A model generated the notes under the pieces. It saw only the letters and a list, made by a program, of their open reading frames with translations, was not told the DNA's origin and did no database searches. The translations under genes and the position numbers were made by a program. A DNA stretch of 64,000 bases, from positions 1-64,000 of the IMG/VR virus record IMGVR_UViG_3300046513_000348; one strand, written 5' to 3'. Below are positions 30,387 through 64,000 of this stretch, piece after piece. Within the stretch, counting starts at the first letter, position 1. Every line of letters begins with the position of its first letter.

Positions 30387-30411
30387 GTAATATATTTGTT
30401 CAATTAATTTC
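30387..30411 (-). promoter_or_regulatory. Early (virion RNAP-type) promoter
   Basis: Exact TATATTAC (30394-30387), the phiKZ early consensus, with upstream GAAATT. Confidence 0.7.
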
Positions 30412-43901: not shown

Positions 43902-45341
43902 TTAAAAACCGAACCCGCGACCGCCGCCACCACCAGCAATATCGCTAGGCAGGAACTCGTCGAAGAGATCGTTGAAGTCACGTCCCATCTTGCGAACGTC
44001 ATCGAGCGAGTCGGTAACGATCGGAGATGCAAGTGCATTGGTAAACACAGGGATAACGAACCGGCCTTGGTTCTTGCCATCCCAGAACATCGTGAAGTCC
44101 ACCTCGCCGAATGCACGGCAAGTTACGTTCAGGCCGACATCGAAGTCGTTACCCGCGGTGATCGGCATCAGGAGCTCATCGATGATGCGATCTTCGAACA
44201 TGTCCAGGAACGGACCCAGCTCCATATCCTTCACGAACGAACGAGCGTTGGACGGAGTGAACGCCCACTTGTGACCGAGTTCCTGGTTGTGCACCTGGAA
44301 GCTGATCTGGTGGATACCGCATTCCATCATCAGTGCCGGGACGGCGATACCGACGAGGGCTGCGATGCGGTCTTCTTCTTCCTGGCCGTCGAGACGGTTG
44401 TACTCGTCGTAACGCGTAATGGCCTTTGCGTCATTGTCCAGCAGCAGCGGATTGGTACGACGCTCTGCATCCGGATCGATCTTCAGCAGGTCGTCGAAGG
44501 TGAAGTTATCCACCGTCACGTTCTTGCCTCGGATGTTCGAGATCTGGCGCAGGAAGATGTCGTCCGATGCATACGACTCTTGCACATAGCCTTGTGCGGT
44601 TGCGTTGATGTCTGCAACTGCATTGCCGTAGTCCGAATTCTCCAAGGCCTTTTGACGGCTATTGAGAACGCTGGCCATGAAGCGCGAGCCCAGGCGGTTG
44701 GAAGTGCTGGACTTGATGGCGTTCTTCGACAGCGTAGTACGCAGATCGGTAACGTCATCGACGAGTTCCATGGTCTGCTCGGAGTCGAGCGACGAGAACA
44801 CGTCTTCAGGACGCATCGTGAACAGACGATCATGGCGACGACGCAGGCCTGCGTTTTCGCGATCCGACAGAACGTCAGCGGTGTGGCTCGGAACGTACAC
44901 ACGCTCGTAACGACCGCTGCGGGTCTTTACGGTTTTCTCGGTGAGCATGAAGGTCGAGTTGACGTAGAACTCCATGTCATGATCGACGTGACGAGTCGTG
45001 AAGCCCACCGAATTGGTGTAGCCCATGATGACTTGCTTCAGGCGATCGCCGGTGCCGACTTCGATCATCAGCGTCAGGATGAAGCGGCCGCGACGGGTAC
45101 CCCAGCCATGCGGGATGTCGATGATGCCACGGGTCTCGTAGTCAGGAACGATGAATTGGTTTGCGATGTTCGCCAGGATGGAAGGAGTGAAACGACGGGA
45201 TTTCGCAAAGCGTTCCTCAATGCGATCAATCACGCCGCCTTTGACTTCGGTAACGTAGGGACGAAGGAACTGATCGGAGTACGTGCCCGATTCGATGATG
45301 TTCAGTTCTTCAACCCAGATTTTCAAGTCTTGCCTTTTCAT
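43902..45341 (-). CDS. picA: Phage-nucleus protein importer PicA/Imp1-like (phiKZ gp69)
   Basis: 479 aa; synteny chmC - sigma-like - picA - gp70 - beta; no diagnostic motif checked. Confidence 0.65.
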   Translation of the reverse strand: MKRQDLKIWVEELNIIESGTYSDQFLRPYVTEVKGGVIDRIEERFAKSRRFTPSILANIANQFIVPDYETRGIIDIPHGWGTRRGRFILTLMIEVGTGDRLKQVIMGYTNSVGFTTRHVDHDMEFYVNSTFMLTEKTVKTRSGRYERVYVPSHTADVLSDRENAGLRRRHDRLFTMRPEDVFSSLDSEQTMELVDDVTDLRTTLSKNAIKSSTSNRLGSRFMASVLNSRQKALENSDYGNAVADINATAQGYVQESYASDDIFLRQISNIRGKNVTVDNFTFDDLLKIDPDAERRTNPLLLDNDAKAITRYDEYNRLDGQEEEDRIAALVGIAVPALMMECGIHQISFQVHNQELGHKWAFTPSNARSFVKDMELGPFLDMFEDRIIDELLMPITAGNDFDVGLNVTCRAFGEVDFTMFWDGKNQGRFVIPVFTNALASPIVTDSLDDVRKMGRDFNDLFDEFLPSDIAGGGGGRGFGF

Positions 45342-45357: not shown

Positions 45358-46923
45358 TTAAAAGTTGTACAAAGAGAGGAATTCTTTATTCCGCTGCTGT
45401 ACGTGGATGACGTATTCCGCCAATCTGATCCGAATGTCGTACCCCACTCGGTATGTTTTATTTGCAGAGCTTCCTCGGAACTCTGCGATCTGCTCATCGG
45501 AAAGGTTCAGGAACCAGGTGTGATCGGAGAGATCGTCACTCAGCTTCTTAATTTCCTCGATTGCTTCGTTGGTTGGGTTCGCCACCTTCTTGGTCGGATG
45601 TCGACGGTAGAAGGGGTAGAGCTCATTGAGTTTATCGACGAGCGCCTTCGGGATGTGAGCACGAGACTCATTACCGTAAGCACCATACCCTTCGGCATTC
45701 ATGCTGCGTGCAGTTGGAATGCCCGCCAGATCCTTGAAGCCCGTGTTCCAGAGCACGAATTGTGCAATACCGGCCAGGCGCAAGTTACTAGCTTTGTTGA
45801 TGTCCCACAACGCCCTTGCGGAGATGATGGGGCTGACGACCCAGCGGATCAGTTGGATTTGACATTCTTCCACGACATGGGGGCTCAGTTGGTCTGCGCT
45901 TTCCAATGCCCGGTCGAGATCGGCCATTTCCTGTTCCGTCAGTTCGTTCTTCAGCAACAGACGTGCCGCGATCTGGTAGACGTACTCGGTGTACTTCTCC
46001 ACGACCGTGAAGTCGCCAGGTGGAACCAGCGGCTTGTTCTTGTACTTCTCAGCACGAGAAGACGAGTCCTCGGACGAATCGTCCTCACCCGGATTGAGCT
46101 TTTCGAGGATCGCATTCTGATGGCTTTCATTCTGCGACAGCCGATTGCGAAGCGTCTTGTGCACAACCTGTACCAGGTGCGTATCCGTCGGCTCACGCGT
46201 CAGGCTTGCAACCACCAGGAACCGAACCAGGATGTTGGCGATCAGGTTCGTCAAGAACGTTTCCGAACCGATGCCGTTGATGGACGAACGAATGTCGATG
46301 TCGTTCTGCTTGACGTTCTTTGCCACATAGTGGTTCAGACGTTCCATCGCCGGACTCGAAATGAACTTCGTCTTCGAGATCAGGTAGTAAGCATTCAGGT
46401 CACGGAAGGTTGCTCCCGATTCCTTCTTGGTGGCTTCCACGAACTCGCCCCAGATTGGAGAGATGACGCGAAGCTTGATCACCATGAACACCAGTTCCCA
46501 ATAGTCCGAGACCAGATAGGTCTGCTCACGGCTACCAGGCTTTTCGTGCGAATACTTGTACTCGACATCGAGTTCTTCCGGGATCCAGATACCGCCGTGG
46601 AAACGCGTCCAGCGTTCGAAGTCTTCGGTGTCGTGCATATCCAACAGCTCTTCGACAACAGGACGAAGCTGAAGGATCAGGGAATTCACCTGGAAGGTAC
46701 CGTTGAAGATTTCCTTGGCTTCACGATACAACTCGAAGACGCGATCCTGCATCTCCGGATCTTGACGATTCCAGAATTTATTCAGCTGGGTGAAAGGTTC
46801 GTACGATCCTTTCTTAAAGGCCTGTTGGTAGGCTGACCCATTGAACTCGAGCGTTTCACCGCGGTGCTCGACGTGGATCATGCTCAGACCACCACCGCCT
46901 GCATGGAGAAACTTTACTTGCAT
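45358..46923 (-). CDS. Non-virion RNAP promoter-specificity (sigma-like) subunit (phiKZ gp68-like)
   Basis: 521 aa from ATG 46923 (AAGGAG RBS); size and synteny. Confidence 0.7.
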   Translation of the reverse strand: MQVKFLHAGGGGLSMIHVEHRGETLEFNGSAYQQAFKKGSYEPFTQLNKFWNRQDPEMQDRVFELYREAKEIFNGTFQVNSLILQLRPVVEELLDMHDTEDFERWTRFHGGIWIPEELDVEYKYSHEKPGSREQTYLVSDYWELVFMVIKLRVISPIWGEFVEATKKESGATFRDLNAYYLISKTKFISSPAMERLNHYVAKNVKQNDIDIRSSINGIGSETFLTNLIANILVRFLVVASLTREPTDTHLVQVVHKTLRNRLSQNESHQNAILEKLNPGEDDSSEDSSSRAEKYKNKPLVPPGDFTVVEKYTEYVYQIAARLLLKNELTEQEMADLDRALESADQLSPHVVEECQIQLIRWVVSPIISARALWDINKASNLRLAGIAQFVLWNTGFKDLAGIPTARSMNAEGYGAYGNESRAHIPKALVDKLNELYPFYRRHPTKKVANPTNEAIEEIKKLSDDLSDHTWFLNLSDEQIAEFRGSSANKTYRVGYDIRIRLAEYVIHVQQRNKEFLSLYNF

Positions 46924-46962: not shown

Positions 46963-46995
46963 GTAATATATCGCTGTATTTTCTTTAAACGATAG
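46963..46995 (-). promoter_or_regulatory. Early promoter
   Basis: Exact TATATTAC (46970-46963), 40 nt before the gp68-like start. Confidence 0.75.
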
Positions 46996-47000
46996 TGTTT

Positions 47001-47026
47001 GCACAGCGGCCCGAAGGCCGCTGTGC
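47001..47026 (-). terminator. Hairpin after the chmC-like gene
   Basis: 11-bp perfect stem with a cUUCGg loop on minus. Confidence 0.6.
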
Positions 47027-47049: not shown

Positions 47050-47814
47050 TTAGAAGGGCATGTCGTCGTCGTCGCCGAAGCTGCTGCCGCCGCTATTGCC
47101 ACCACTGTAGCCACCCGACGAATCGTCGTTGCTGCTGTTGTTGTTTCCTTTCCAGCCACCGCCGCCACCGCCACGGTTGTTGTTGTAACCGCCGCCACCG
47201 CCGCCGTTACCCTTCCAGCCACCGCCACCGCCGCCTTGCTGCTTCGGTTCCGGATGCTTGTAGGTGACCAGGGAGACGCCGACCATGATCTTCGAGATCA
47301 GGTTGTACACGCCGCGTGCGACCAGGACCGAGATTTCCGCTTCCGTCACCGGCTGGCCGTTGACTTCGAAGTTGTGGAAACGGGTCGGTGCGAACGGGAA
47401 GTAGATCTTCGGACGGCTCTGGTTTTCCAGGTCTTCGACCATGATGTACACGACGCCGTCGGGACGCTTGCCGACTTCGACTTTCGCCACGTCGACCGGA
47501 CGCTTGTCTTGACCGCGAATCGACTTGCAGATGACGCTCGCTTTGATCGGGTCCTTGCTGCGGGTAACCATGTCCAGCTGTTCGAGGTGAACTTGCAGGT
47601 CCAGGATACCGAACTTGGCCTGGATACGGCCGAAGTTGTTTTCCTTGTCGCTCGGGTCGTTGGTGTAGACCGTGATGCCAGGGTTGTCGTTGTTCGCGTA
47701 GTACTGCAGCGTCGACCATGCCTTGATGCCCTTGACGGGGCAAGGAACGGACAACTGGATTTTCTTGGAATCGAGCAGGTTCTTGTCCCGCGCTTTGGGC
47801 TTGAAGTCAGCCAT
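47050..47814 (-). CDS. chmC: ChmC-like nucleic-acid-binding protein (phiKZ gp67/Imp6) with Gly/Asn-rich tail and acidic tip
   Basis: 254 aa; beta-rich core, G/N-rich disordered tail, ends DDDDMPF; directly upstream of the gp68-like gene. Confidence 0.7.
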   Translation of the reverse strand: MADFKPKARDKNLLDSKKIQLSVPCPVKGIKAWSTLQYYANNDNPGITVYTNDPSDKENNFGRIQAKFGILDLQVHLEQLDMVTRSKDPIKASVICKSIRGQDKRPVDVAKVEVGKRPDGVVYIMVEDLENQSRPKIYFPFAPTRFHNFEVNGQPVTEAEISVLVARGVYNLISKIMVGVSLVTYKHPEPKQQGGGGGGWKGNGGGGGGYNNNRGGGGGGWKGNNNSSNDDSSGGYSGGNSGGSSFGDDDDMPF

Positions 47815-47884: not shown

Positions 47885-48724
47885 TTACATCATGTCTTTC
47901 ACGACTTCACGGAAGTATGGGTTCTGGAGTTTGCCCAGACTCATTCTTACTCGTGCATCAGTCGTCAAAGGACCCCAGTTATCCGCAATCGCAACTTCAA
48001 CAATCGCTTTGCGGAGCGCCGAGTCTTTCGGTGAAAAGAATTCCTTGTCTCCGAAGATACGAAGGAAGTACTGCGTAAAAGGAATCATCGAGAGTTCTTT
48101 GCCGTTATTGTACTTGGTGTACCACAGCGACTTATTCTTGATGGCACCAGTATGCGATTCAAGCAGATCAAGTTCGTCGAAATAACGATCAGAGACTAGG
48201 TCGAATGCAATGTGGGTTTGGATCAGGTAGCGAGCATCTTTGCGATCAGGCTTGATATCGGTATCGAACCCTTTCACATAGCCTTCGCCAACATCGTGCA
48301 GAAACTGCGAGATGCTTTTCTCCATCCGCTTACGTTCATCCTTCTGCTTTTGGGTCTGGTCGGATTTAAAGACAGAATGCTTATTGTAGCGGTTGTAGAT
48401 TTGTCGGTAATTAGGAAGATACAGAACCGGCGTCAGTCGAGAGTTCTCGGTGACTACCTTCTTGATCATTTCCCACTCGTCATGCATCAGTTCAGCAATG
48501 ATACCGGGCATGAGGAGGATGTTGATGTCGGATGTGTACGAACCAACGATGTTTCGGTAAAGAGTACGGGCATTCATCCAGTACTCGTCGTAGTTTAAAT
48601 GAGGAGGCTTCGGCCACTGACGTTCGGGATGAATTCCCATCAGCGATTCGAGAGCCAGAGAAGTTGGAATGTTGATCGGATATTGACCACGCTCCATCTT
48701 CTCTGTGAATGAGAAGACATTCAT
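47885..48724 (-). CDS. Conserved nucleus-block protein, possible PIN/FEN-like nuclease fold
   Basis: 279 aa; WMNARTLYRN and LLESHTG motifs; fold assignment tentative. Confidence 0.45.
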   Translation of the reverse strand: MNVFSFTEKMERGQYPINIPTSLALESLMGIHPERQWPKPPHLNYDEYWMNARTLYRNIVGSYTSDINILLMPGIIAELMHDEWEMIKKVVTENSRLTPVLYLPNYRQIYNRYNKHSVFKSDQTQKQKDERKRMEKSISQFLHDVGEGYVKGFDTDIKPDRKDARYLIQTHIAFDLVSDRYFDELDLLESHTGAIKNKSLWYTKYNNGKELSMIPFTQYFLRIFGDKEFFSPKDSALRKAIVEVAIADNWGPLTTDARVRMSLGKLQNPYFREVVKDMM

Positions 48725-49044
48725 GATTTTAATAAATGGTGGATCCAGCGATGCATGAACTCATGCTGTTCGATTGGATAGACGTCGTGACTTTTGTGGC
48801 TCGTGACCAATTGGAAATAGAACCAGGGATCGAGCGTGGCGCGACGGACCACTTCTTTCTCATTTACAAAAGTAATGTTGGTTCTTTTCAAAGGATGCCA
48901 TGGAGGCATTGGCATCTGAGCTTCACCAAAGCGGAAGTCGGAATAAAAAGCAGGTTCCACAATCCGAACCGTGGTGGCGATAAATGTTTTTTCGTGAGGA
49001 CGTAAGTTCAGGTTCGTTCGAATCGGAATCAGTCCGCCTATCAT
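48721..49044 (-). CDS. Hypothetical protein
   Basis: 107 aa, ATGA overlaps at both ends. Confidence 0.7.
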   Translation of the reverse strand: MIGGLIPIRTNLNLRPHEKTFIATTVRIVEPAFYSDFRFGEAQMPMPPWHPLKRTNITFVNEKEVVRRATLDPWFYFQLVTSHKSHDVYPIEQHEFMHRWIHHLLKS

Positions 49045-49370: not shown

Positions 49371-50561
49371 TTACATTACGGATGCCATGAGACTGTCAAA
49401 GTATTGTTTCTCTGACGGACGAAGAGTTTCGCTCATACGTTCTTCCACGATAGTTACGATGTTGGACTCATCAATGGTGAACGGAACGTAGTCTTTGTCT
49501 TCAGTTACTTCGACAATCTTCTCGGACGCATCCGCTTCTTCATCCAGAATTTTCTTGGAGAAGCGGATGAATGGGTATTGTGCTTGAAATGTATCGACCG
49601 CAGCGAGTAATGGGTGAGTTTTACGGGCAGCGATACGAATGTGAGAATGCAGATGATGGCGATCACAAAGATCACGAACTTGGGCAGTTGCCACGTCCAC
49701 GTCCTCATCCACTTCCACGGTCTTGAAAACCATTGCATGTTCGTTCACCTCGAACTTAGCGTGGAAGGTACCATCACGATGTACGATAGCACGAACGAAG
49801 CCTTTGTCTTCTTCCATGCCATGACGCTGACGATCAGGACTACCTTGTACGATTAGGTTACCACGTTGCTGGAACGTGTGGTCATGACCAATGAAACCGA
49901 GGTAGCGAATGATCGCGCGGTACGCTTCGGAATCGTGGAAACGGCGTACCTGACCAACGGGAACTTGGAAATCGAAGAATCCGTGCATGAGTGCAAAGTC
50001 AACTTTCTCCAAAGCACGAGTTTGCATCAGGTCACGGACCTGTCGGTAAGTTACTTCATCCGACGTATTCTTTTCATCAGGAATACAGAGAAGATGCAGG
50101 TCGTACTTCTCAATGTATTCGATCGACACTTCCTTGATGTAACGCAGGTCACACTTCTCGTGTTCTTCAGCGGCATCATTAATCGCAACAAACAGCTGCG
50201 ACTGTAAACGGTCGTGAGAAGGCGTACCTTCCAGAACGATAACAGTAATGCCAAGCTTCGCACAACGAGCAAGTAATCGGCGTATCCAAGAAGTGATGTG
50301 GGGAACGTCACGATGATTCAGCGGGAGACCTCGATCGAACACGTCGCCATTGATGAAGAGTAGGTCTAAACCCTTCAGGTACTTCGGCGTAAGTTTCTTC
50401 TCGAGGCCTCGGATTACGAATTCAGCAGGATTGGCTGCGTTTCCCAGATGGATATCTGAGATCGACAGAACATCAATCCGTGTCCAGTTCGTATTCGCCG
50501 ACACCGTCGTCGGGAACGCTTGCTCCAGCGAGTCCGACAGCTTTGTCTTTGTTGGGGTCAT
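49371..50561 (-). CDS. sbcD: SbcD/Mre11-like metallophosphoesterase nuclease
   Basis: SDIHLG, INGDVFD, EGTPSHD, MHG and GHDH motifs; the 5' end must overlap the upstream gene. Confidence 0.85.
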   Translation of the reverse strand: MTPTKTKLSDSLEQAFPTTVSANTNWTRIDVLSISDIHLGNAANPAEFVIRGLEKKLTPKYLKGLDLLFINGDVFDRGLPLNHRDVPHITSWIRRLLARCAKLGITVIVLEGTPSHDRLQSQLFVAINDAAEEHEKCDLRYIKEVSIEYIEKYDLHLLCIPDEKNTSDEVTYRQVRDLMQTRALEKVDFALMHGFFDFQVPVGQVRRFHDSEAYRAIIRYLGFIGHDHTFQQRGNLIVQGSPDRQRHGMEEDKGFVRAIVHRDGTFHAKFEVNEHAMVFKTVEVDEDVDVATAQVRDLCDRHHLHSHIRIAARKTHPLLAAVDTFQAQYPFIRFSKKILDEEADASEKIVEVTEDKDYVPFTIDESNIVTIVEERMSETLRPSEKQYFDSLMASVM

Positions 50562-58431: not shown

Positions 58432-58460
58432 GTAATATATCAGTGAAATTAGTTTAAAAC
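58432..58460 (-). promoter_or_regulatory. Early promoter of chmA
   Basis: Exact TATATTAC (58439-58432) with upstream AATTTCA. Confidence 0.75.
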
Positions 58461-61912: not shown

Positions 61913-64000
61913 TTAATACAAGTCGTAAATCATTCGTGTATTTTTCTTATTGGCCATACCAACGCCCATTGCTTCTAGGATGTGGTAATAGGCACCGCAG
62001 GATTCGCGAACGATCTTGCGTGCATTCGAACCAGCCAGTATCTCGTCAGGGATACCGGAGATTTGAACGATGCTCACTGGAACGTAAAGAGTCGTAAGGA
62101 TCTTGCGACCAATCCTTTCCATTTCGGTTTTGATGTCTTCAACAAGACGTTGGTCCTTGATCTGTTCGAGCCAAGTCGCAAACTCAGTCACGTTGTTAAC
62201 TTCAAGCGAAACCTTCAGCATGGTGTAAGGAGGCTCATCAACCATTCCGTAGACTTTGCCGAATGTACGATTCCAGAACAGATGGTTCCAGTACGGGGTA
62301 CGATCCTCGTCCTGAACCTTGTAGGCCTTTGCAGGCTTCAAGTGAGCCATCTTGAAGTACTCGGTCTTGCCGGATTTCACATCGCTGTAGATTCCGTTTT
62401 CCTTCTCGGCGATGGTGTCGATCAGATCGTTCAGGTAGATATCCTTCCCGGCCACTATGTCTTTCATCTGGTCGAGCAGGAACTTCTTCACATTCTTCAC
62501 GATATCACCAGGCGTAGCTGAGGAGATCATGTTCGCACCCTTCAGTTCCAGTTCCGGCTTCTTAAAGACGTTACCTTCCTGAGCAGATTTCATTGCCCAG
62601 TAGTGCTTTGCCATCAAGGTTGGGACGAAGATGTCGAACTTGTACTCGTTCTTCATCTGCACGTCGAACAGACGATCGCGATGGACGCCATAGTTCGCGC
62701 TCATCTTGGCATGCAGGTGCGAGGAGGTCTGTGCTGCGAGATAAACTACAACGTCAGACGTCGAGTTCATTTCGTCAGTGAAACCAATCGTACCGTAAAT
62801 GCGCTGAACCCATTCCTGTACGGTGAACAGAGTCGAGTCAGTATCGCCACCCAGCACGGAACGACGGACCGAGGTCGGGAAGTTACCGGTGGATGCTGGC
62901 ATGTTGTCGCTGAGCCAGAATGCATTGATGATCGGCTGTACGCCAACGAGGACGTCGTTGATGTTCTTGGCCACATGCGCCAGAATGCCGTAGTTGCGTT
63001 CGTCGGTCTTGCGAATCTCTTTCGGCTTCATGCCTTTCGAGAAAGAACGGCACAGCTGACGAGCCAGATTGAGCGTATCTTCCGAAACAGCTTTCAGAAC
63101 GAAGTCGGCTTCTTCAACTGGTAGGGATTCACTCGGAATCCAAATCAGACGACCAAGCAGATCCGAAACGAATTGCTTGTTGTGCTTGTACAGATGGTAG
63201 AAATCACCAACGTACACAAATGCCGCACGTTCCAGCGGAGACATCTTCGAGATGAACTCGTACACCGGACCCATCATCTTGTTCGACTGGAAGTACAGCT
63301 GCCTGGACCGCTCGATACATTCCAATACTTCGTCGGATGTCGGATAAGCCAGGCCGTAGATCCGCATTGCGGTTTCGACCTTTTCCATGTCGGTGATTTG
63401 CGAGATCGACACCAGGTTGTTCAGGATGGTATCGACGTCCATGTAATGGCGATTGCCTTCGATGAACTTCTCGTTGTTGGCGTTACCGTACGCCGTGGTA
63501 TTGCGGCAGTTCGTCGTGAGGGACGAGTGCGAGGTCGGATTGAACAGGCAGGTCGACGGAGTCAGCGATGCGCCCGACAGCGAGTTGTTGGTGGTCTTCT
63601 TGTTATTCTGTTCGAGGTTCTTAAAGATGTACAGAACATCGTCACCAGCATTCTTCGCATCGAACATCTGACCCTTACTAATGTCTCGGCCCACGATGTT
63701 GTCCATGGTGTACAGGGACAGAAGCGATTGTCGCACATCTGGCGAGCAGTAAGAGGTGAAGGTCGGTGACATGGATTCGTCGTTAGCGATCACGTCCGAC
63801 AGGTATTTCGACATCGTAGTTTCTTCGAGACGGCGGTCTTCGAAGTTGCTGCGATGCAGGAAGCGAACCTTCGGGTCATGGAATTCAAACAGACCACCCG
63901 GGCGTAGGTTTTGGATAACGAACTCGCGAGCTTCTTCCAGCGAGATGTTCTTGGTTTTGTGGAGATAGAAAGATGCCTGGTCAACGTAACCATTGAGCAT
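61913..64000 (-). CDS. Split family-B DNA polymerase, palm (motif B/C) subunit (phiKZ gp50-like); may extend beyond the window
   Basis: Motif B KKTTNNSLSG, motif C GGDTDS, and KHY...ELKG. Confidence 0.88.
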   Translation of the reverse strand: MLNGYVDQASFYLHKTKNISLEEAREFVIQNLRPGGLFEFHDPKVRFLHRSNFEDRRLEETTMSKYLSDVIANDESMSPTFTSYCSPDVRQSLLSLYTMDNIVGRDISKGQMFDAKNAGDDVLYIFKNLEQNNKKTTNNSLSGASLTPSTCLFNPTSHSSLTTNCRNTTAYGNANNEKFIEGNRHYMDVDTILNNLVSISQITDMEKVETAMRIYGLAYPTSDEVLECIERSRQLYFQSNKMMGPVYEFISKMSPLERAAFVYVGDFYHLYKHNKQFVSDLLGRLIWIPSESLPVEEADFVLKAVSEDTLNLARQLCRSFSKGMKPKEIRKTDERNYGILAHVAKNINDVLVGVQPIINAFWLSDNMPASTGNFPTSVRRSVLGGDTDSTLFTVQEWVQRIYGTIGFTDEMNSTSDVVVYLAAQTSSHLHAKMSANYGVHRDRLFDVQMKNEYKFDIFVPTLMAKHYWAMKSAQEGNVFKKPELELKGANMISSATPGDIVKNVKKFLLDQMKDIVAGKDIYLNDLIDTIAEKENGIYSDVKSGKTEYFKMAHLKPAKAYKVQDEDRTPYWNHLFWNRTFGKVYGMVDEPPYTMLKVSLEVNNVTEFATWLEQIKDQRLVEDIKTEMERIGRKILTTLYVPVSIVQISGIPDEILAGSNARKIVRESCGAYYHILEAMGVGMANKKNTRMIYDLY

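What the first reader, a model, noticed from the sequence alone, without database searches (positions are those of the whole stretch)
47050..47240. ChmC-like protein ends in a bacterial SSB-type acidic tip (DDDDMPF)
Seen: a Gly/Asn-rich linker then FGDDDDMPF, nearly the E. coli SSB tip DFDDDIPF. Known: the SSB tip recruits ExoI, RecQ, RecO, PriA, Pol III chi, RNase HI, Ung and Topo III; ChmC/gp67 is nucleus-associated and implicated in import. Inference: the tip could be an adaptor that brings host SSB-interacting enzymes to or through the phage nucleus, or the protein doubles as the phage SSB.
Basis: partly seen in the sequence, partly recalled or inferred. Interest (0 to 1): 0.6.

Follow-up and report, generated by a model that had tools for sequence, protein, structure and literature searches.

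The report
SSB-style tail tip on phage ChmC
A jumbo-phage "nucleus" protein (ChmC/Imp6) that binds RNA through a non-SSB fold carries the flexible linker and acidic end-peptide typical of bacterial single-stranded-DNA-binding protein. That end-peptide is conserved across the family, so it is probably a docking or self-regulating handle nobody has yet tested.

Summary
Window 47050-47814 (minus strand) encodes a 254-aa protein ending in FGDDDDMPF after a roughly 55-residue Gly/Asn-rich disordered linker.

The protein is the ChmC/Imp6 (phiKZ gp67) orthologue of an RSL2-like chimallivirus. This rests on sequence homology, a Whirly fold (Z about 10) and conserved gene order (gp65, gp66, ChmC, nvRNAP gp68, PicA/Imp1).

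The tip is not chance. Among 77 homologues, position -4 is D in 72, -3 is I/V/M/L in 70, -2 is P in 50 and -1 is F/W/Y in 69, while the linker is free-varying low complexity. One homologue ends in DFDDDIPF, the same last eight residues as E. coli SSB. No other ORF in this 218.7-kb genome has such an end.

The published ChmC work calls this region an "electronegative cluster". No paper in the library links ChmC with SSB.

Tips differ between phages of one host, whereas the host SSB tip was identical in 74 of 80 gammaproteobacterial loci. This argues for a phage-side or self partner rather than wholesale capture of host SSB partners.

No canonical SSB is detectable in this phage or in five relatives, so "ChmC doubles as the SSB" remains open. 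Nothing here tests the tip's function directly.

The parts
47050..47814 (-). ChmC/Imp6 orthologue CDS (254 aa plus stop)
   Evidence: ORF and translation. phrog_3284 E 1e-59. tblastn to PHIKZ067 at 28.5% identity, E 2e-7. 77 homologues found.
47245..47814 (-). Whirly-fold nucleic-acid-binding domain, residues 1-190 (basic, pI 9.1)
   Evidence: AF2 model: pLDDT above 90 over residues ~10-185. VIA-align: WHY2 Z 10.1, StWhy2 9.8, PBF-2 9.3, MRP1/2 8.9, PurA 7.6, then a drop to 4.9. Charge and pI.
47080..47244 (-). Disordered Gly/Asn-rich linker, residues 191-245, with W/Y and K/R 'stickers' (two GGGGGGWKGN units, one NRGGGGGG)
   Evidence: pLDDT about 40. Family composition is 47% G and 14% N. 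The part from the first Gly run to the tip is 52 aa here, family median 46, against 54 aa for the E. coli SSB linker.
47053..47079 (-). SSB-Ct-type C-terminal tip FGDDDDMPF, residues 246-254
   Evidence: for the comparison. Position-specific conservation in 77 homologues. Unique in the genome.
47001..47026 (-). 11-bp GC hairpin with UUCG loop, 24 nt after the ChmC stop; likely transcript end or stabiliser that sets ChmC apart from the downstream gene
   Evidence: dG -25.9 kcal/mol, z -5.7, 0 of 200 shuffles as stable. An equivalent strong hairpin sits right after the ChmC stop in 9 related phages.
43902..45341 (-). PicA/Imp1 orthologue (context). It is the only experimentally shown direct binder of ChmC/Imp6 in phiKZ.
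   Evidence: tblastn with phiKZ gp69, E 2e-17. phrog_3141 E 2e-109. Imp1-Imp6 co-purification and SEC complex reported in bioRxiv 10.1101/2024.03.27.586873.
45358..46923 (-). nvRNAP subunit gp68 orthologue (context). The start is taken at ATG 46923, with an AAAGGAG ribosome-binding site 5 nt upstream.
   Evidence: tblastn with phiKZ gp68 residues 1-521 maps to 46923-45385. phrog_3209 E 2e-139, beginning at residue 28 of the longer GTG ORF. Sequence read.

Best explanation
The gene is the ChmC/Imp6 orthologue of an RSL2-like nucleus-forming jumbo phage.

Its last 7-9 residues are a family-wide conserved C-terminal short linear motif of the bacterial SSB-Ct type: acidic run, hydrophobic residue, Pro, terminal aromatic with a free carboxylate. 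A ~55-residue Gly/Asn-rich disordered linker hangs this motif on a basic Whirly domain. The homologous domain is a homotetramer in PhiPA3.

I propose it works as SSB, T4 gp32, T7 gp2.5 and plant WHIRLY tails do.
(a) Without nucleic acid, the acidic/aromatic tip sits on the basic nucleic-acid surface of its own or a neighbouring tetramer. This tunes RNA/ssDNA binding and, together with the sticky linker, drives the reported condensates.
(b) When RNA or ssDNA displaces it, the tip is free to plug into a pocket on a partner. The partner is most probably phage-encoded and co-evolving. Imp1/PicA at the nuclear shell is the only proven direct binder of ChmC. Rhc, DNA polymerase, nvRNAP and ChmB co-purify with it. 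Docking would anchor ChmC at the shell and at the replication and transcription machinery.

Shown here: gene identity, fold, disorder, motif and its conservation.
Shown in the literature: tetramer, RNA and ssDNA binding, and tail-dependent condensates and shell localisation.
Inferred: that the tip rather than the linker carries the docking and autoinhibitory function, and which partner it binds.
For: Identity.

Fold and disorder.

Tip conservation against a free-varying linker: -5 D/E in 65 of 77, -4 D in 72, -3 I/V/M/L in 70, -2 P in 50, -1 F/W/Y in 69. A purely electrostatic 'acidic cluster' would not need a fixed hydrophobic-Pro-aromatic end at the exact C-terminus.

Spread of the tip: variants occur across cultured chimalliviruses of Pseudomonas, Ralstonia, Burkholderia, Erwinia and Bacillus. 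They are clade-structured on the Whirly-domain tree.

Architecture parallel with E. coli SSB: linker length, tip and multimerisation.

Literature:
- Deleting PhiPA3 ChmC residues 204-251 abolishes both condensates and nuclear-shell localisation but not tetramers or RNA binding (PMC11077065).
- In E. coli SSB the linker is required for phase separation, tip-OB contacts enhance it and ssDNA competes (10.1101/797431).
- In plant WHIRLY, C-terminal Glu271-Trp272 contacts Lys188, and mutating W272 raises ssDNA binding (PMC9070903).
- phiKZ Imp1 binds gp67 directly.
- A Goslar GFP-Rhc pulldown recovers ChmC together with DNAP and nvRNAP.

Phage-side rather than host partner: tips differ between phages of one host while the host SSB tip is invariant.
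Against: - No experiment or computation here isolates the tip. The published deletion removes linker and tip together.
- The Vibrio phage Yong homologue has no acidic tip (ends SGSSTGW). Goslar, 201phi2-1 and Noxifer tips are degenerate, so the motif is dispensable or replaceable in some lineages.
- phiKZ-clade tips have an extra residue between Pro and the terminal Phe, which would not fit a canonical SSB-Ct pocket.
- The published AF2 screen of phiKZ Rhc against all phiKZ proteins did not return gp67.
- The AF2 monomer model does not dock the tail on the domain; the tail has pLDDT about 40.
- The Imp1-gp67 pull-downs used a FLAG tag written both as gp67-FLAG and as FLAG-Imp6. If the tag was C-terminal, a free carboxylate is not needed for Imp1 binding.
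Confidence: 0.55

Rival explanations
1. ChmC is the 'missing' replicative single-stranded-DNA-binding protein of chimalliviruses. It would be a Whirly-fold analogue of SSB whose tip organises the phage replisome (split DNA polymerase, Rhc RNase H-clamp, DnaB-like helicase, UvsX), as SSB-Ct, the gp32 C-domain and the gp2.5 tail do. This is not exclusive of the mRNA role.
For: - No PF00436 SSB and no gp32 family match in this 97%-complete genome, nor PF00436 in phiKZ, Goslar, PhiPA3, RSL2 or Ea35-70.
- Kazlauskas et al. 2016 explicitly failed to find an SSB in phiKZ-like phages and called that surprising (PMC4889955).
- PhiPA3 ChmC binds ssDNA with Kd 184 nM, only about 3-fold weaker than ssRNA. 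It is abundant, expressed early, and was found by proximity labelling with UvsX.
- A Rhc pulldown recovers ChmC with both DNAP subunits.
- ChmC knockdown shrinks the nucleus.
- UniRef names the SURPRISE13 homologue 'Single-stranded DNA-binding protein'.
Against: - Published eCLIP, mRNA-localisation and protein-level data support an mRNA role (PMC11077065).
- The preference is for RNA over ssDNA.
- The phiKZ and Goslar polymerase was reconstituted without it.
- PhiPA3 ChmC sits at the shell rather than throughout the nucleus.
- Absence of a Pfam match does not prove absence of a divergent OB-fold SSB.
Confidence: 0.3
2. Host mimicry. The tip copies host SSB-Ct so that ChmC/Imp6, bound to the importer Imp1, captures host SSB-interacting enzymes and brings them to or into the phage nucleus, or titrates them away from host SSB.
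For: - In this phage and many relatives the tip is canonical (DDDDMPF, DDDIPF). One homologue matches the last eight residues of E. coli SSB.
- ChmC binds the importer Imp1, and at least one host protein (TopA) is imported via Imp1/Imp3.
Against: - Tips are not matched to hosts. Goslar (E. coli) has FDGLAF and phiKZ (P. aeruginosa) has DEDMPSF.
- RSF1 (DDISF) and RP12 (DDIPW) share the host Ralstonia solanacearum yet differ.
- The host tip was DFDDDIPF in 74 of 80 gammaproteobacterial SSB loci spanning 59-97% identity. One of the six seed patterns lay near the C-terminus, so this is a mild ascertainment bias.
- Loss of Pro at -2 in the RSL2 clade resembles a known loss-of-binding change in E. 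coli SSB (own knowledge).
Confidence: 0.15
3. The published view is sufficient. The end of the tail is just a Ser/Asp/Glu 'electronegative cluster' that keeps the protein soluble and damps non-specific RNA binding by charge alone, with no specific docking.
For: PMC11077065 proposes this. The tip has net charge -4 against a basic domain of pI 9.1. Some lineages keep acidity but a degenerate end.
Against: Charge alone does not explain the near-fixed hydrophobic residue at -3, Pro at -2 and aromatic at the very last position, when the 45-50 residues before them drift freely. It also does not explain the exact terminal placement.
Confidence: 0.15
4. Chance or low-complexity artefact, or not a real gene end.
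For: The region is GC-rich and repetitive, and mirror ORFs exist on the other strand.
Against: The frame is continuous with a confidently folded, conserved domain. The end is conserved in 77 homologues and 16 cultured phages. A conserved hairpin follows the stop.
Confidence: 0.01

Closest known systems
ChmC / Imp6 of chimalliviruses (PhiPA3 gp61, phiKZ gp67, Goslar gp176)
   Same: - Homologous sequence.
- Whirly fold.
- N/G-rich disordered tail with an acidic end.
- Same gene neighbourhood: gp65 SbcD-like, gp66, ChmC, nvRNAP gp68, PicA/Imp1.
- Hairpin after the stop.
   Different: Only 28.5% identical to phiKZ gp67. The tip here is the canonical SSB form (DDDDMPF), whereas phiKZ and PhiPA3 have a residue inserted between Pro and Phe (MPSF, IPNF) and Goslar is degenerate (GLAF). 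The literature describes the tail as an electronegative cluster, not as an SSB-type motif.
Bacterial SSB C-terminal tail (disordered linker plus SSB-Ct tip, E. coli MDFDDDIPF)
   Same: - A multimeric single-strand-binding core.
- A ~50-residue Gly-rich disordered linker.
- An acidic tip ending in hydrophobic-Pro-Phe.
- Tail-dependent phase separation.
- Five of the last seven residues are identical.
   Different: The core is a Whirly fold, not an OB fold. The linker is G/N-rich with W/Y and K/R stickers rather than G/Q/P-rich. The measured preference of the homologue is RNA over ssDNA. The tip varies between lineages, while the bacterial tip is nearly invariant. No partner of the tip is known.
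Plant WHIRLY proteins (PBF-2/StWHY1, WHY2) and their putative C-terminal autoregulatory motif
   Same: Same fold (Z 9-10). Tetrameric single-strand binders. A conserved acidic plus aromatic C-terminal element that contacts the domain and lowers ssDNA binding (PMC9070903).
   Different: No sequence-level match to Pfam Whirly. The plant motif is a short Glu-Trp element close to the domain, not a tip on a ~55-residue Gly-rich tether. The plant proteins have no Pro-aromatic free C-terminus.
Phage SSBs with acidic C-terminal tails (T7 gp2.5 with its essential terminal Phe; T4 gp32 C-domain); own knowledge, not tested here
   Same: An acidic tail that both occupies the protein's own DNA-binding surface and recruits the phage polymerase, helicase and other phage proteins. 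A phage-specific, co-evolving partner set.
   Different: Those proteins have OB folds and shorter tails, and they lack the Pro-Phe SSB-Ct signature.

Membership tests
ChmC / Imp6 (phiKZ gp67 family, phrog_3284) | Sequence homology to phiKZ gp67, PhiPA3 gp61 and Goslar gp176 | tested here: met
   phrog_3284 E 1e-59 over residues 2-253. tblastn to PHIKZ067 E 2e-7. Goslar gp176 retrieves the same phiKZ locus.
ChmC / Imp6 (phiKZ gp67 family, phrog_3284) | Whirly-domain fold | tested here: met
   AF2 model, pLDDT above 90 over the domain. WHY2 Z 10.1, StWhy2 9.8, PBF-2 9.3, MRP1/2 8.9, with the next unrelated fold at 4.9.
ChmC / Imp6 (phiKZ gp67 family, phrog_3284) | Disordered N/G-rich C-terminal tail with an acidic end | tested here: met
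ChmC / Imp6 (phiKZ gp67 family, phrog_3284) | Conserved gene block with nvRNAP gp68 and PicA/Imp1 downstream, and gp66 and gp65 upstream | tested here: met
   tblastn of phiKZ gp65, gp66, gp68 and gp69 maps in order to 50468-44622. PHROG matches.
ChmC / Imp6 (phiKZ gp67 family, phrog_3284) | Homotetramer, RNA binding, nuclear-shell localisation, Imp1 binding | not testable with these tools
   Known only for the PhiPA3, phiKZ and Goslar proteins. Of the six basic residues mutated in PhiPA3, two align to basic residues here.
Bacterial SSB (Pfam PF00436) | OB-fold ssDNA-binding core | tested here: not met
   No Pfam match. The fold is Whirly. Therefore it is not a member of the SSB family.
Bacterial SSB (Pfam PF00436) | Gly-rich intrinsically disordered linker of about 50 residues | tested here: met
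   From the first Gly run to the tip: 52 aa here, family median 46, against 54 aa in E. coli SSB. pLDDT about 40.
Bacterial SSB (Pfam PF00436) | C-terminal tip: acidic run, I/L/V/M, Pro, Phe, free C-terminus | tested here: met
   DDDDMPF against E. coli FDDDIPF. Conserved in the family. Homologue P0041 ends in DFDDDIPF.
Bacterial SSB (Pfam PF00436) | The tip binds SSB-interacting proteins | not testable with these tools
   Needs peptide binding assays.
Plant-type Whirly (Pfam PF08536) | Match to the Whirly sequence model | tested here: not met
   No Pfam family at E up to 1. The relationship is structural only. The Atlas search shows a viral cluster with 13% PF08536 members at score 0.81.
Plant-type Whirly (Pfam PF08536) | C-terminal acidic/aromatic autoregulatory element contacting the domain | tested here: inconclusive
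   An acidic/aromatic end is present, but the AF2 monomer model leaves it undocked. The plant precedent comes from PMC9070903.

The most novel reading that the evidence does not exclude
ChmC/Imp6 is the long-sought SSB of nucleus-forming jumbo phages. It would be a Whirly-fold protein that has converged on the full bacterial SSB design: tetramer, Gly-rich linker, DDD-hydrophobic-Pro-Phe tip. Its tip would be the hub that ties single-stranded nucleic acid (ssDNA at forks, nascent RNA and R-loops) to the phage replisome (DNAP-Rhc) and to the Imp1 import and export site. In phages with a canonical tip, such as this one, it could also carry host SSB-interacting enzymes into the nucleus.
Probability: 0.2. 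Interest if true: 0.85.

Novelty: new variant of a known kind. Interest (0 to 1): 0.6.

Why it matters
ChmC/Imp6 is an essential core protein of nucleus-forming phages. No transposon insertions are tolerated and it is a strong antisense-knockdown hit. Its mechanism is unsettled between mRNA export and protein import.

Recognising that its extreme C-terminus is a conserved SSB-Ct-type peptide gives a precise, small handle of seven residues. That handle can separate the roles of linker and tip, and can be used to fish for the partner that holds ChmC at the shell.

It also allows a test of whether chimalliviruses fill their unexplained lack of an SSB with a Whirly-fold analogue. If so, this would be a clean case of convergent evolution of the whole SSB tail design on an unrelated fold.

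Tried and rejected
- Complex prediction of the own-genome Rhc (526 aa, alignment A2) with ChmC residues 205-254 (alignment A1). Verdict 'no answer', ipSAE 0.00 in two runs, controls not run. This is evidence neither for nor against binding.
- Pfam scan of ChmC: no family.
- phmmer of ChmC against PDB sequences: only low-complexity hits such as the TDP-43 Gly-rich region. The tail alone gave nothing.
- Foldseek alone gave only weak E-values (best 7.5e-3). VIA-align was needed to confirm the fold.
- Pfam DnaB_C and DNA_pol_B searches of the genome: no match, although a DNAP-C homologue is plainly present by tblastn. Negative Pfam searches in this genome are therefore weak evidence of absence, and this caveat also applies to the SSB result.
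- tblastn with phiKZ ChmA and PhiPA3 ChmB found nothing in this genome at E up to 0.01, so ChmB could not be located as a candidate partner.
- Supplementary data on delta-C binding constants are not held.
- A literature search for the TATATTAC motif was uninformative.
- The large representative protein search was not used. The protein was already identified and the claim does not rest on absence of relatives.

Full report
**Observation**

The minus-strand ORF 47050-47814 encodes 254 residues. After a folded N-terminal part comes a Gly/Asn-rich stretch, residues 191-245, which includes two GGGGGGWKGN units. The protein ends in FGDDDDMPF.

E. coli K-12 SSB, read from its RefSeq record, ends in PPMDFDDDIPF. 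The last seven residues share five identities and one conservative change. Within the 218,660-bp genome that holds the window (97% complete by CheckV), this is the only one of 1424 stop-to-stop ORFs of 60 aa or more with an acidic tail ending hydrophobic-Pro-aromatic.

**Identity**

- The window belongs to a jumbo phage about 72% identical in DNA to the Ralstonia/Burkholderia phages RSL2, FLC4-5C, FLC6 and RsoM3USA.
- The protein has no Pfam family. It matches phrog_3284 end to end (E 1e-59). By tblastn it matches PHIKZ067 (28.5% identity, E 2e-7).
- phiKZ gp67, PhiPA3 gp61 and Goslar gp176 are ChmC (PMC11077065), also named Imp6 (10.1101/2024.03.27.586873).
- Gene order is the phiKZ order: gp65 SbcD-like nuclease (49371-50561), gp66 (47885-48724), ChmC, nvRNAP gp68 (45358-46923) and PicA/Imp1 (43902-45341).
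- An AlphaFold2 model built on 62 homologues has pLDDT above 90 for residues ~10-185 and about 40 for residues 197-254.
- The domain aligns with plant WHY2 (Z 10.1), StWhy2 (9.8), PBF-2 (9.3), trypanosome MRP1/2 (8.9) and PurA (7.6). The next unrelated fold scores 4.9. Foldseek alone gave the same families at weak E-values.

**Is the tip conserved?**

A word-index search gave 77 proteins, including the query, most from metagenomes, down to about 22-30% identity. Their tails show a drifting linker (47% G, 14% N) and then a fixed end:

| Position | Residue | Count (of 77) |
|---|---|---|
| -5 | D/E | 65 |
| -4 | D | 72 |
| -3 | I/V/M/L | 70 |
| -2 | P | 50 (otherwise S/T/A/Q) |
| -1 | F/W/Y | 69 |

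P0041 ends in DFDDDIPF, identical to the E. coli tip over eight residues.

I also read the annotated genes of 16 cultured phages:

| Phage | Tail end |
|---|---|
| RSL2 / RSF1 | DFDDISF |
| RP12 | DDIPW |
| FLC9 | EDLPF |
| Ea35-70 | DFADDLPF |
| DT01 | FDDDVPL |
| Bacillus phage AgentSmith | FDTDVPM |
| phiKZ | FDEDMPSF |
| PhiPA3 | FDDEIPNF |
| PA1C | FDDSIPDF |
| Phabio | SVPDFG |
| 201phi2-1 | ELASFDW |
| Viktualia | ELPSFDW |
| Noxifer | DFDDFVM |
| Goslar | FDGLAF |
| Vibrio phage Yong MS32 | SGSSTGW (no acidic tip) |

On a quick maximum-likelihood tree of the Whirly domains (93 rows) the tip classes are clade-structured:
- The canonical form fills the Ralstonia/Burkholderia-type half.
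- One RSL2 subclade has lost the proline.
- The Pseudomonas phiKZ clade has one residue inserted between Pro and the terminal aromatic.

The motif is therefore old in the family, under selection, and evolving by lineage.

**What the literature says about this tail**

PMC11077065 describes a ~40-residue N/G-rich region followed by a ~15-residue S/D/E-rich "electronegative cluster". It reports:
- PhiPA3 ChmC is a homotetramer that binds ssRNA (Kd 58 nM) and ssDNA (184 nM).
- Deleting residues 204-251 abolishes condensates and nuclear-shell localisation while leaving tetramers and RNA binding.

That deletion removes linker and tip together. The paper never mentions SSB. No paper in the searched library contains both ChmC and SSB in a relevant sense. 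Two recent reviews do not mention SSB either. One UniRef entry names the SURPRISE13 homologue "Single-stranded DNA-binding protein", so an annotator or pipeline has made the link for that one homologue.

**Comparison with SSB**

The design matches bacterial SSB part by part:
- A multimeric single-strand-binding core.
- A Gly-rich disordered linker (52 aa here, family median 46, E. coli 54).
- An acidic tip with hydrophobic-Pro-Phe at the free end.
- Tail-dependent phase separation.

In E. coli SSB the linker is required for condensates, tip-OB contacts enhance them and ssDNA competes with the tip (10.1101/797431). The tip recruits at least 17 partner proteins (PMC10018359 abstract).

Membership in the SSB family fails on the defining OB fold. 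This is analogy, not homology. There are further differences:
- The ChmC linker carries aromatic and basic "stickers" and an RGG-like element.
- The measured preference of the homologue is RNA.

Within the Whirly family itself there is a precedent for an acidic/aromatic C-terminal element that contacts the domain and lowers ssDNA binding (plant WHIRLY Glu271-Trp272 to Lys188; PMC9070903).

**Host partners or phage partners?**

A scan of bacterial genomes with E. coli SSB returned 80 loci of 59-97% identity (Enterobacterales, Vibrio, Aeromonas, including Erwinia amylovora and Salmonella). Of these, 74 end in exactly DFDDDIPF. One of the six seed peptides lay near the C-terminus, which is a mild bias.

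Against that invariance, ChmC tips differ between phages of the same host and depart from the host tip in Goslar (E. coli), phiKZ (P. aeruginosa) and Ea35-70 (Erwinia). The proline lost in the RSL2 clade is the residue whose change to serine cripples E. coli SSB partner binding (ssb-113; my own knowledge).

A motif constrained by a large host interactome should not drift like this. A motif that co-evolves with one or a few phage proteins, or with the protein's own surface, should. In this particular phage the tip is canonical, so host binding is not excluded.

**Candidate partners**

- The only direct binder shown experimentally is Imp1/PicA. It gave co-expression pull-downs both ways and a SEC-stable complex of about 120 kDa. 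It is encoded two genes downstream here.
- PhiPA3 GFP-ChmC pulls down ChmB, one subunit of each phage RNA polymerase and ribosomal proteins.
- Goslar GFP-Rhc pulls down ChmC with nvRNAP and both DNAP subunits. E. coli RNase HI is a known SSB-Ct client (own knowledge).
- I located Rhc in this genome (genome contig C1 117.6-120.9 kb, locus L002; 526 aa) and asked for a co-fold with the ChmC tail. The tool returned "no answer". That is reported only as a failed attempt.

**The missing SSB**

Neither PF00436 nor the gp32 family is detectable in this genome. PF00436 is also undetectable in phiKZ, Goslar, PhiPA3, RSL2 or Ea35-70. Kazlauskas et al. noted the same gap for phiKZ-like phages and called it surprising (PMC4889955). 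Recent reconstitutions of the chimallivirus polymerase do not mention an SSB.

Caveat: Pfam models also missed this phage's DNA polymerase and helicase, so a divergent OB-fold SSB could hide.

ChmC is abundant, early, UvsX-proximal and binds ssDNA at 184 nM. The SSB reading is therefore live, but it is unsupported by any replication assay.

**Verdict**

The tip is a conserved SSB-Ct-type short linear motif on a Whirly-fold protein, a feature the field has described only as an acidic cluster.

My best reading has two parts:
- A dual SSB-style role: self-contact with the basic domain, and docking to a mainly phage-encoded partner at the shell or replisome.
- Host-partner capture as the less likely option, and "phage SSB" as an open, non-exclusive one.

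I rate it a new variant of a known kind, with interest 0.6.

Noticed in passing
window 47001-47026 (minus strand); L001, L006, L007, L010, L011, L014-L017 intergenic regions: A very stable hairpin (11 GC-rich pairs, UUCG loop, -25.9 kcal/mol, z -5.7) lies 24 nt after the ChmC stop, with no U-run on the coding strand. Every related phage examined has an equally strong hairpin right after its ChmC stop, within a spacer of ~77-206 nt before the next gene. It is probably a transcript end or stabiliser that lets ChmC be expressed at a different level from the neighbouring nvRNAP subunit.
   Followed up: partly
window 46963-46970 (minus); also 30387-30394 and 58432-58439 (minus): TATATTAC sits ~40 nt upstream of the gp68-homologue start. 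The same or a near motif (TATATTAC or TATATCAT) sits at the same place in phiKZ, PhiPA3, 201phi2-1, RP12, FLC9, Noxifer, RSL2 and RSF1. There are three copies in the window against 0.39 expected. From memory it resembles the AT-rich early promoter consensus of phiKZ-like phages; I did not verify this in the literature.
   Followed up: partly
window 46923 vs 47004 (minus): The mechanical ORF for the gp68 (nvRNAP subunit) homologue starts at GTG 47004, inside the hairpin. Homology to phiKZ gp68 and the PHROG profile begin at ATG 46923, which has AAAGGAG 5 nt upstream, so the real start is most likely 46923.
   Followed up: yes
window 43902-45341 (minus); L023 886-2343: The PicA/Imp1 homologue ends in a short Gly-rich/aromatic tail (GGGGGRGFGF). 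RSL2 ORF212 ends similarly (GAGGSGRGYSY), but phiKZ gp69 does not. It could co-partition with the Gly/aromatic linker of its binding partner ChmC.
   Followed up: partly
window 61916-64000 (minus), running on to 64063 of the genome: The homologue of phiKZ gp50 (DNA polymerase C-terminal subunit; 33% identity, E 9e-131) runs off the end of the window. Pfam DNA_pol_B does not detect it.
   Followed up: partly
window 48721-49044 (minus): A 107-aa ORF between the gp66 and gp65 homologues, overlapping the gp66-homologue start by 4 nt, has no Pfam or PHROG match.
   Followed up: no
proteins P0096, P0099, P0100, P0108 (relatives of the genome's Rhc; genome contig C1 117.6-120.9 kb, locus L002): Four Rhc (RNase H-clamp) homologues are 675-764 aa instead of ~525 aa and carry extra Pfam domains (PF20987, and PF01541 GIY-YIG in one). 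This suggests an inserted mobile element or endonuclease domain in this essential replication gene.
   Followed up: no
L094 (Pseudomonas lundensis contig): An SSB relative in which the DIPF motif is internal and followed by ~16 further residues (ending ...YGIS). Five other loci have similar non-canonical ends. They may be plasmid-type or otherwise variant SSBs, or frame problems.
   Followed up: no
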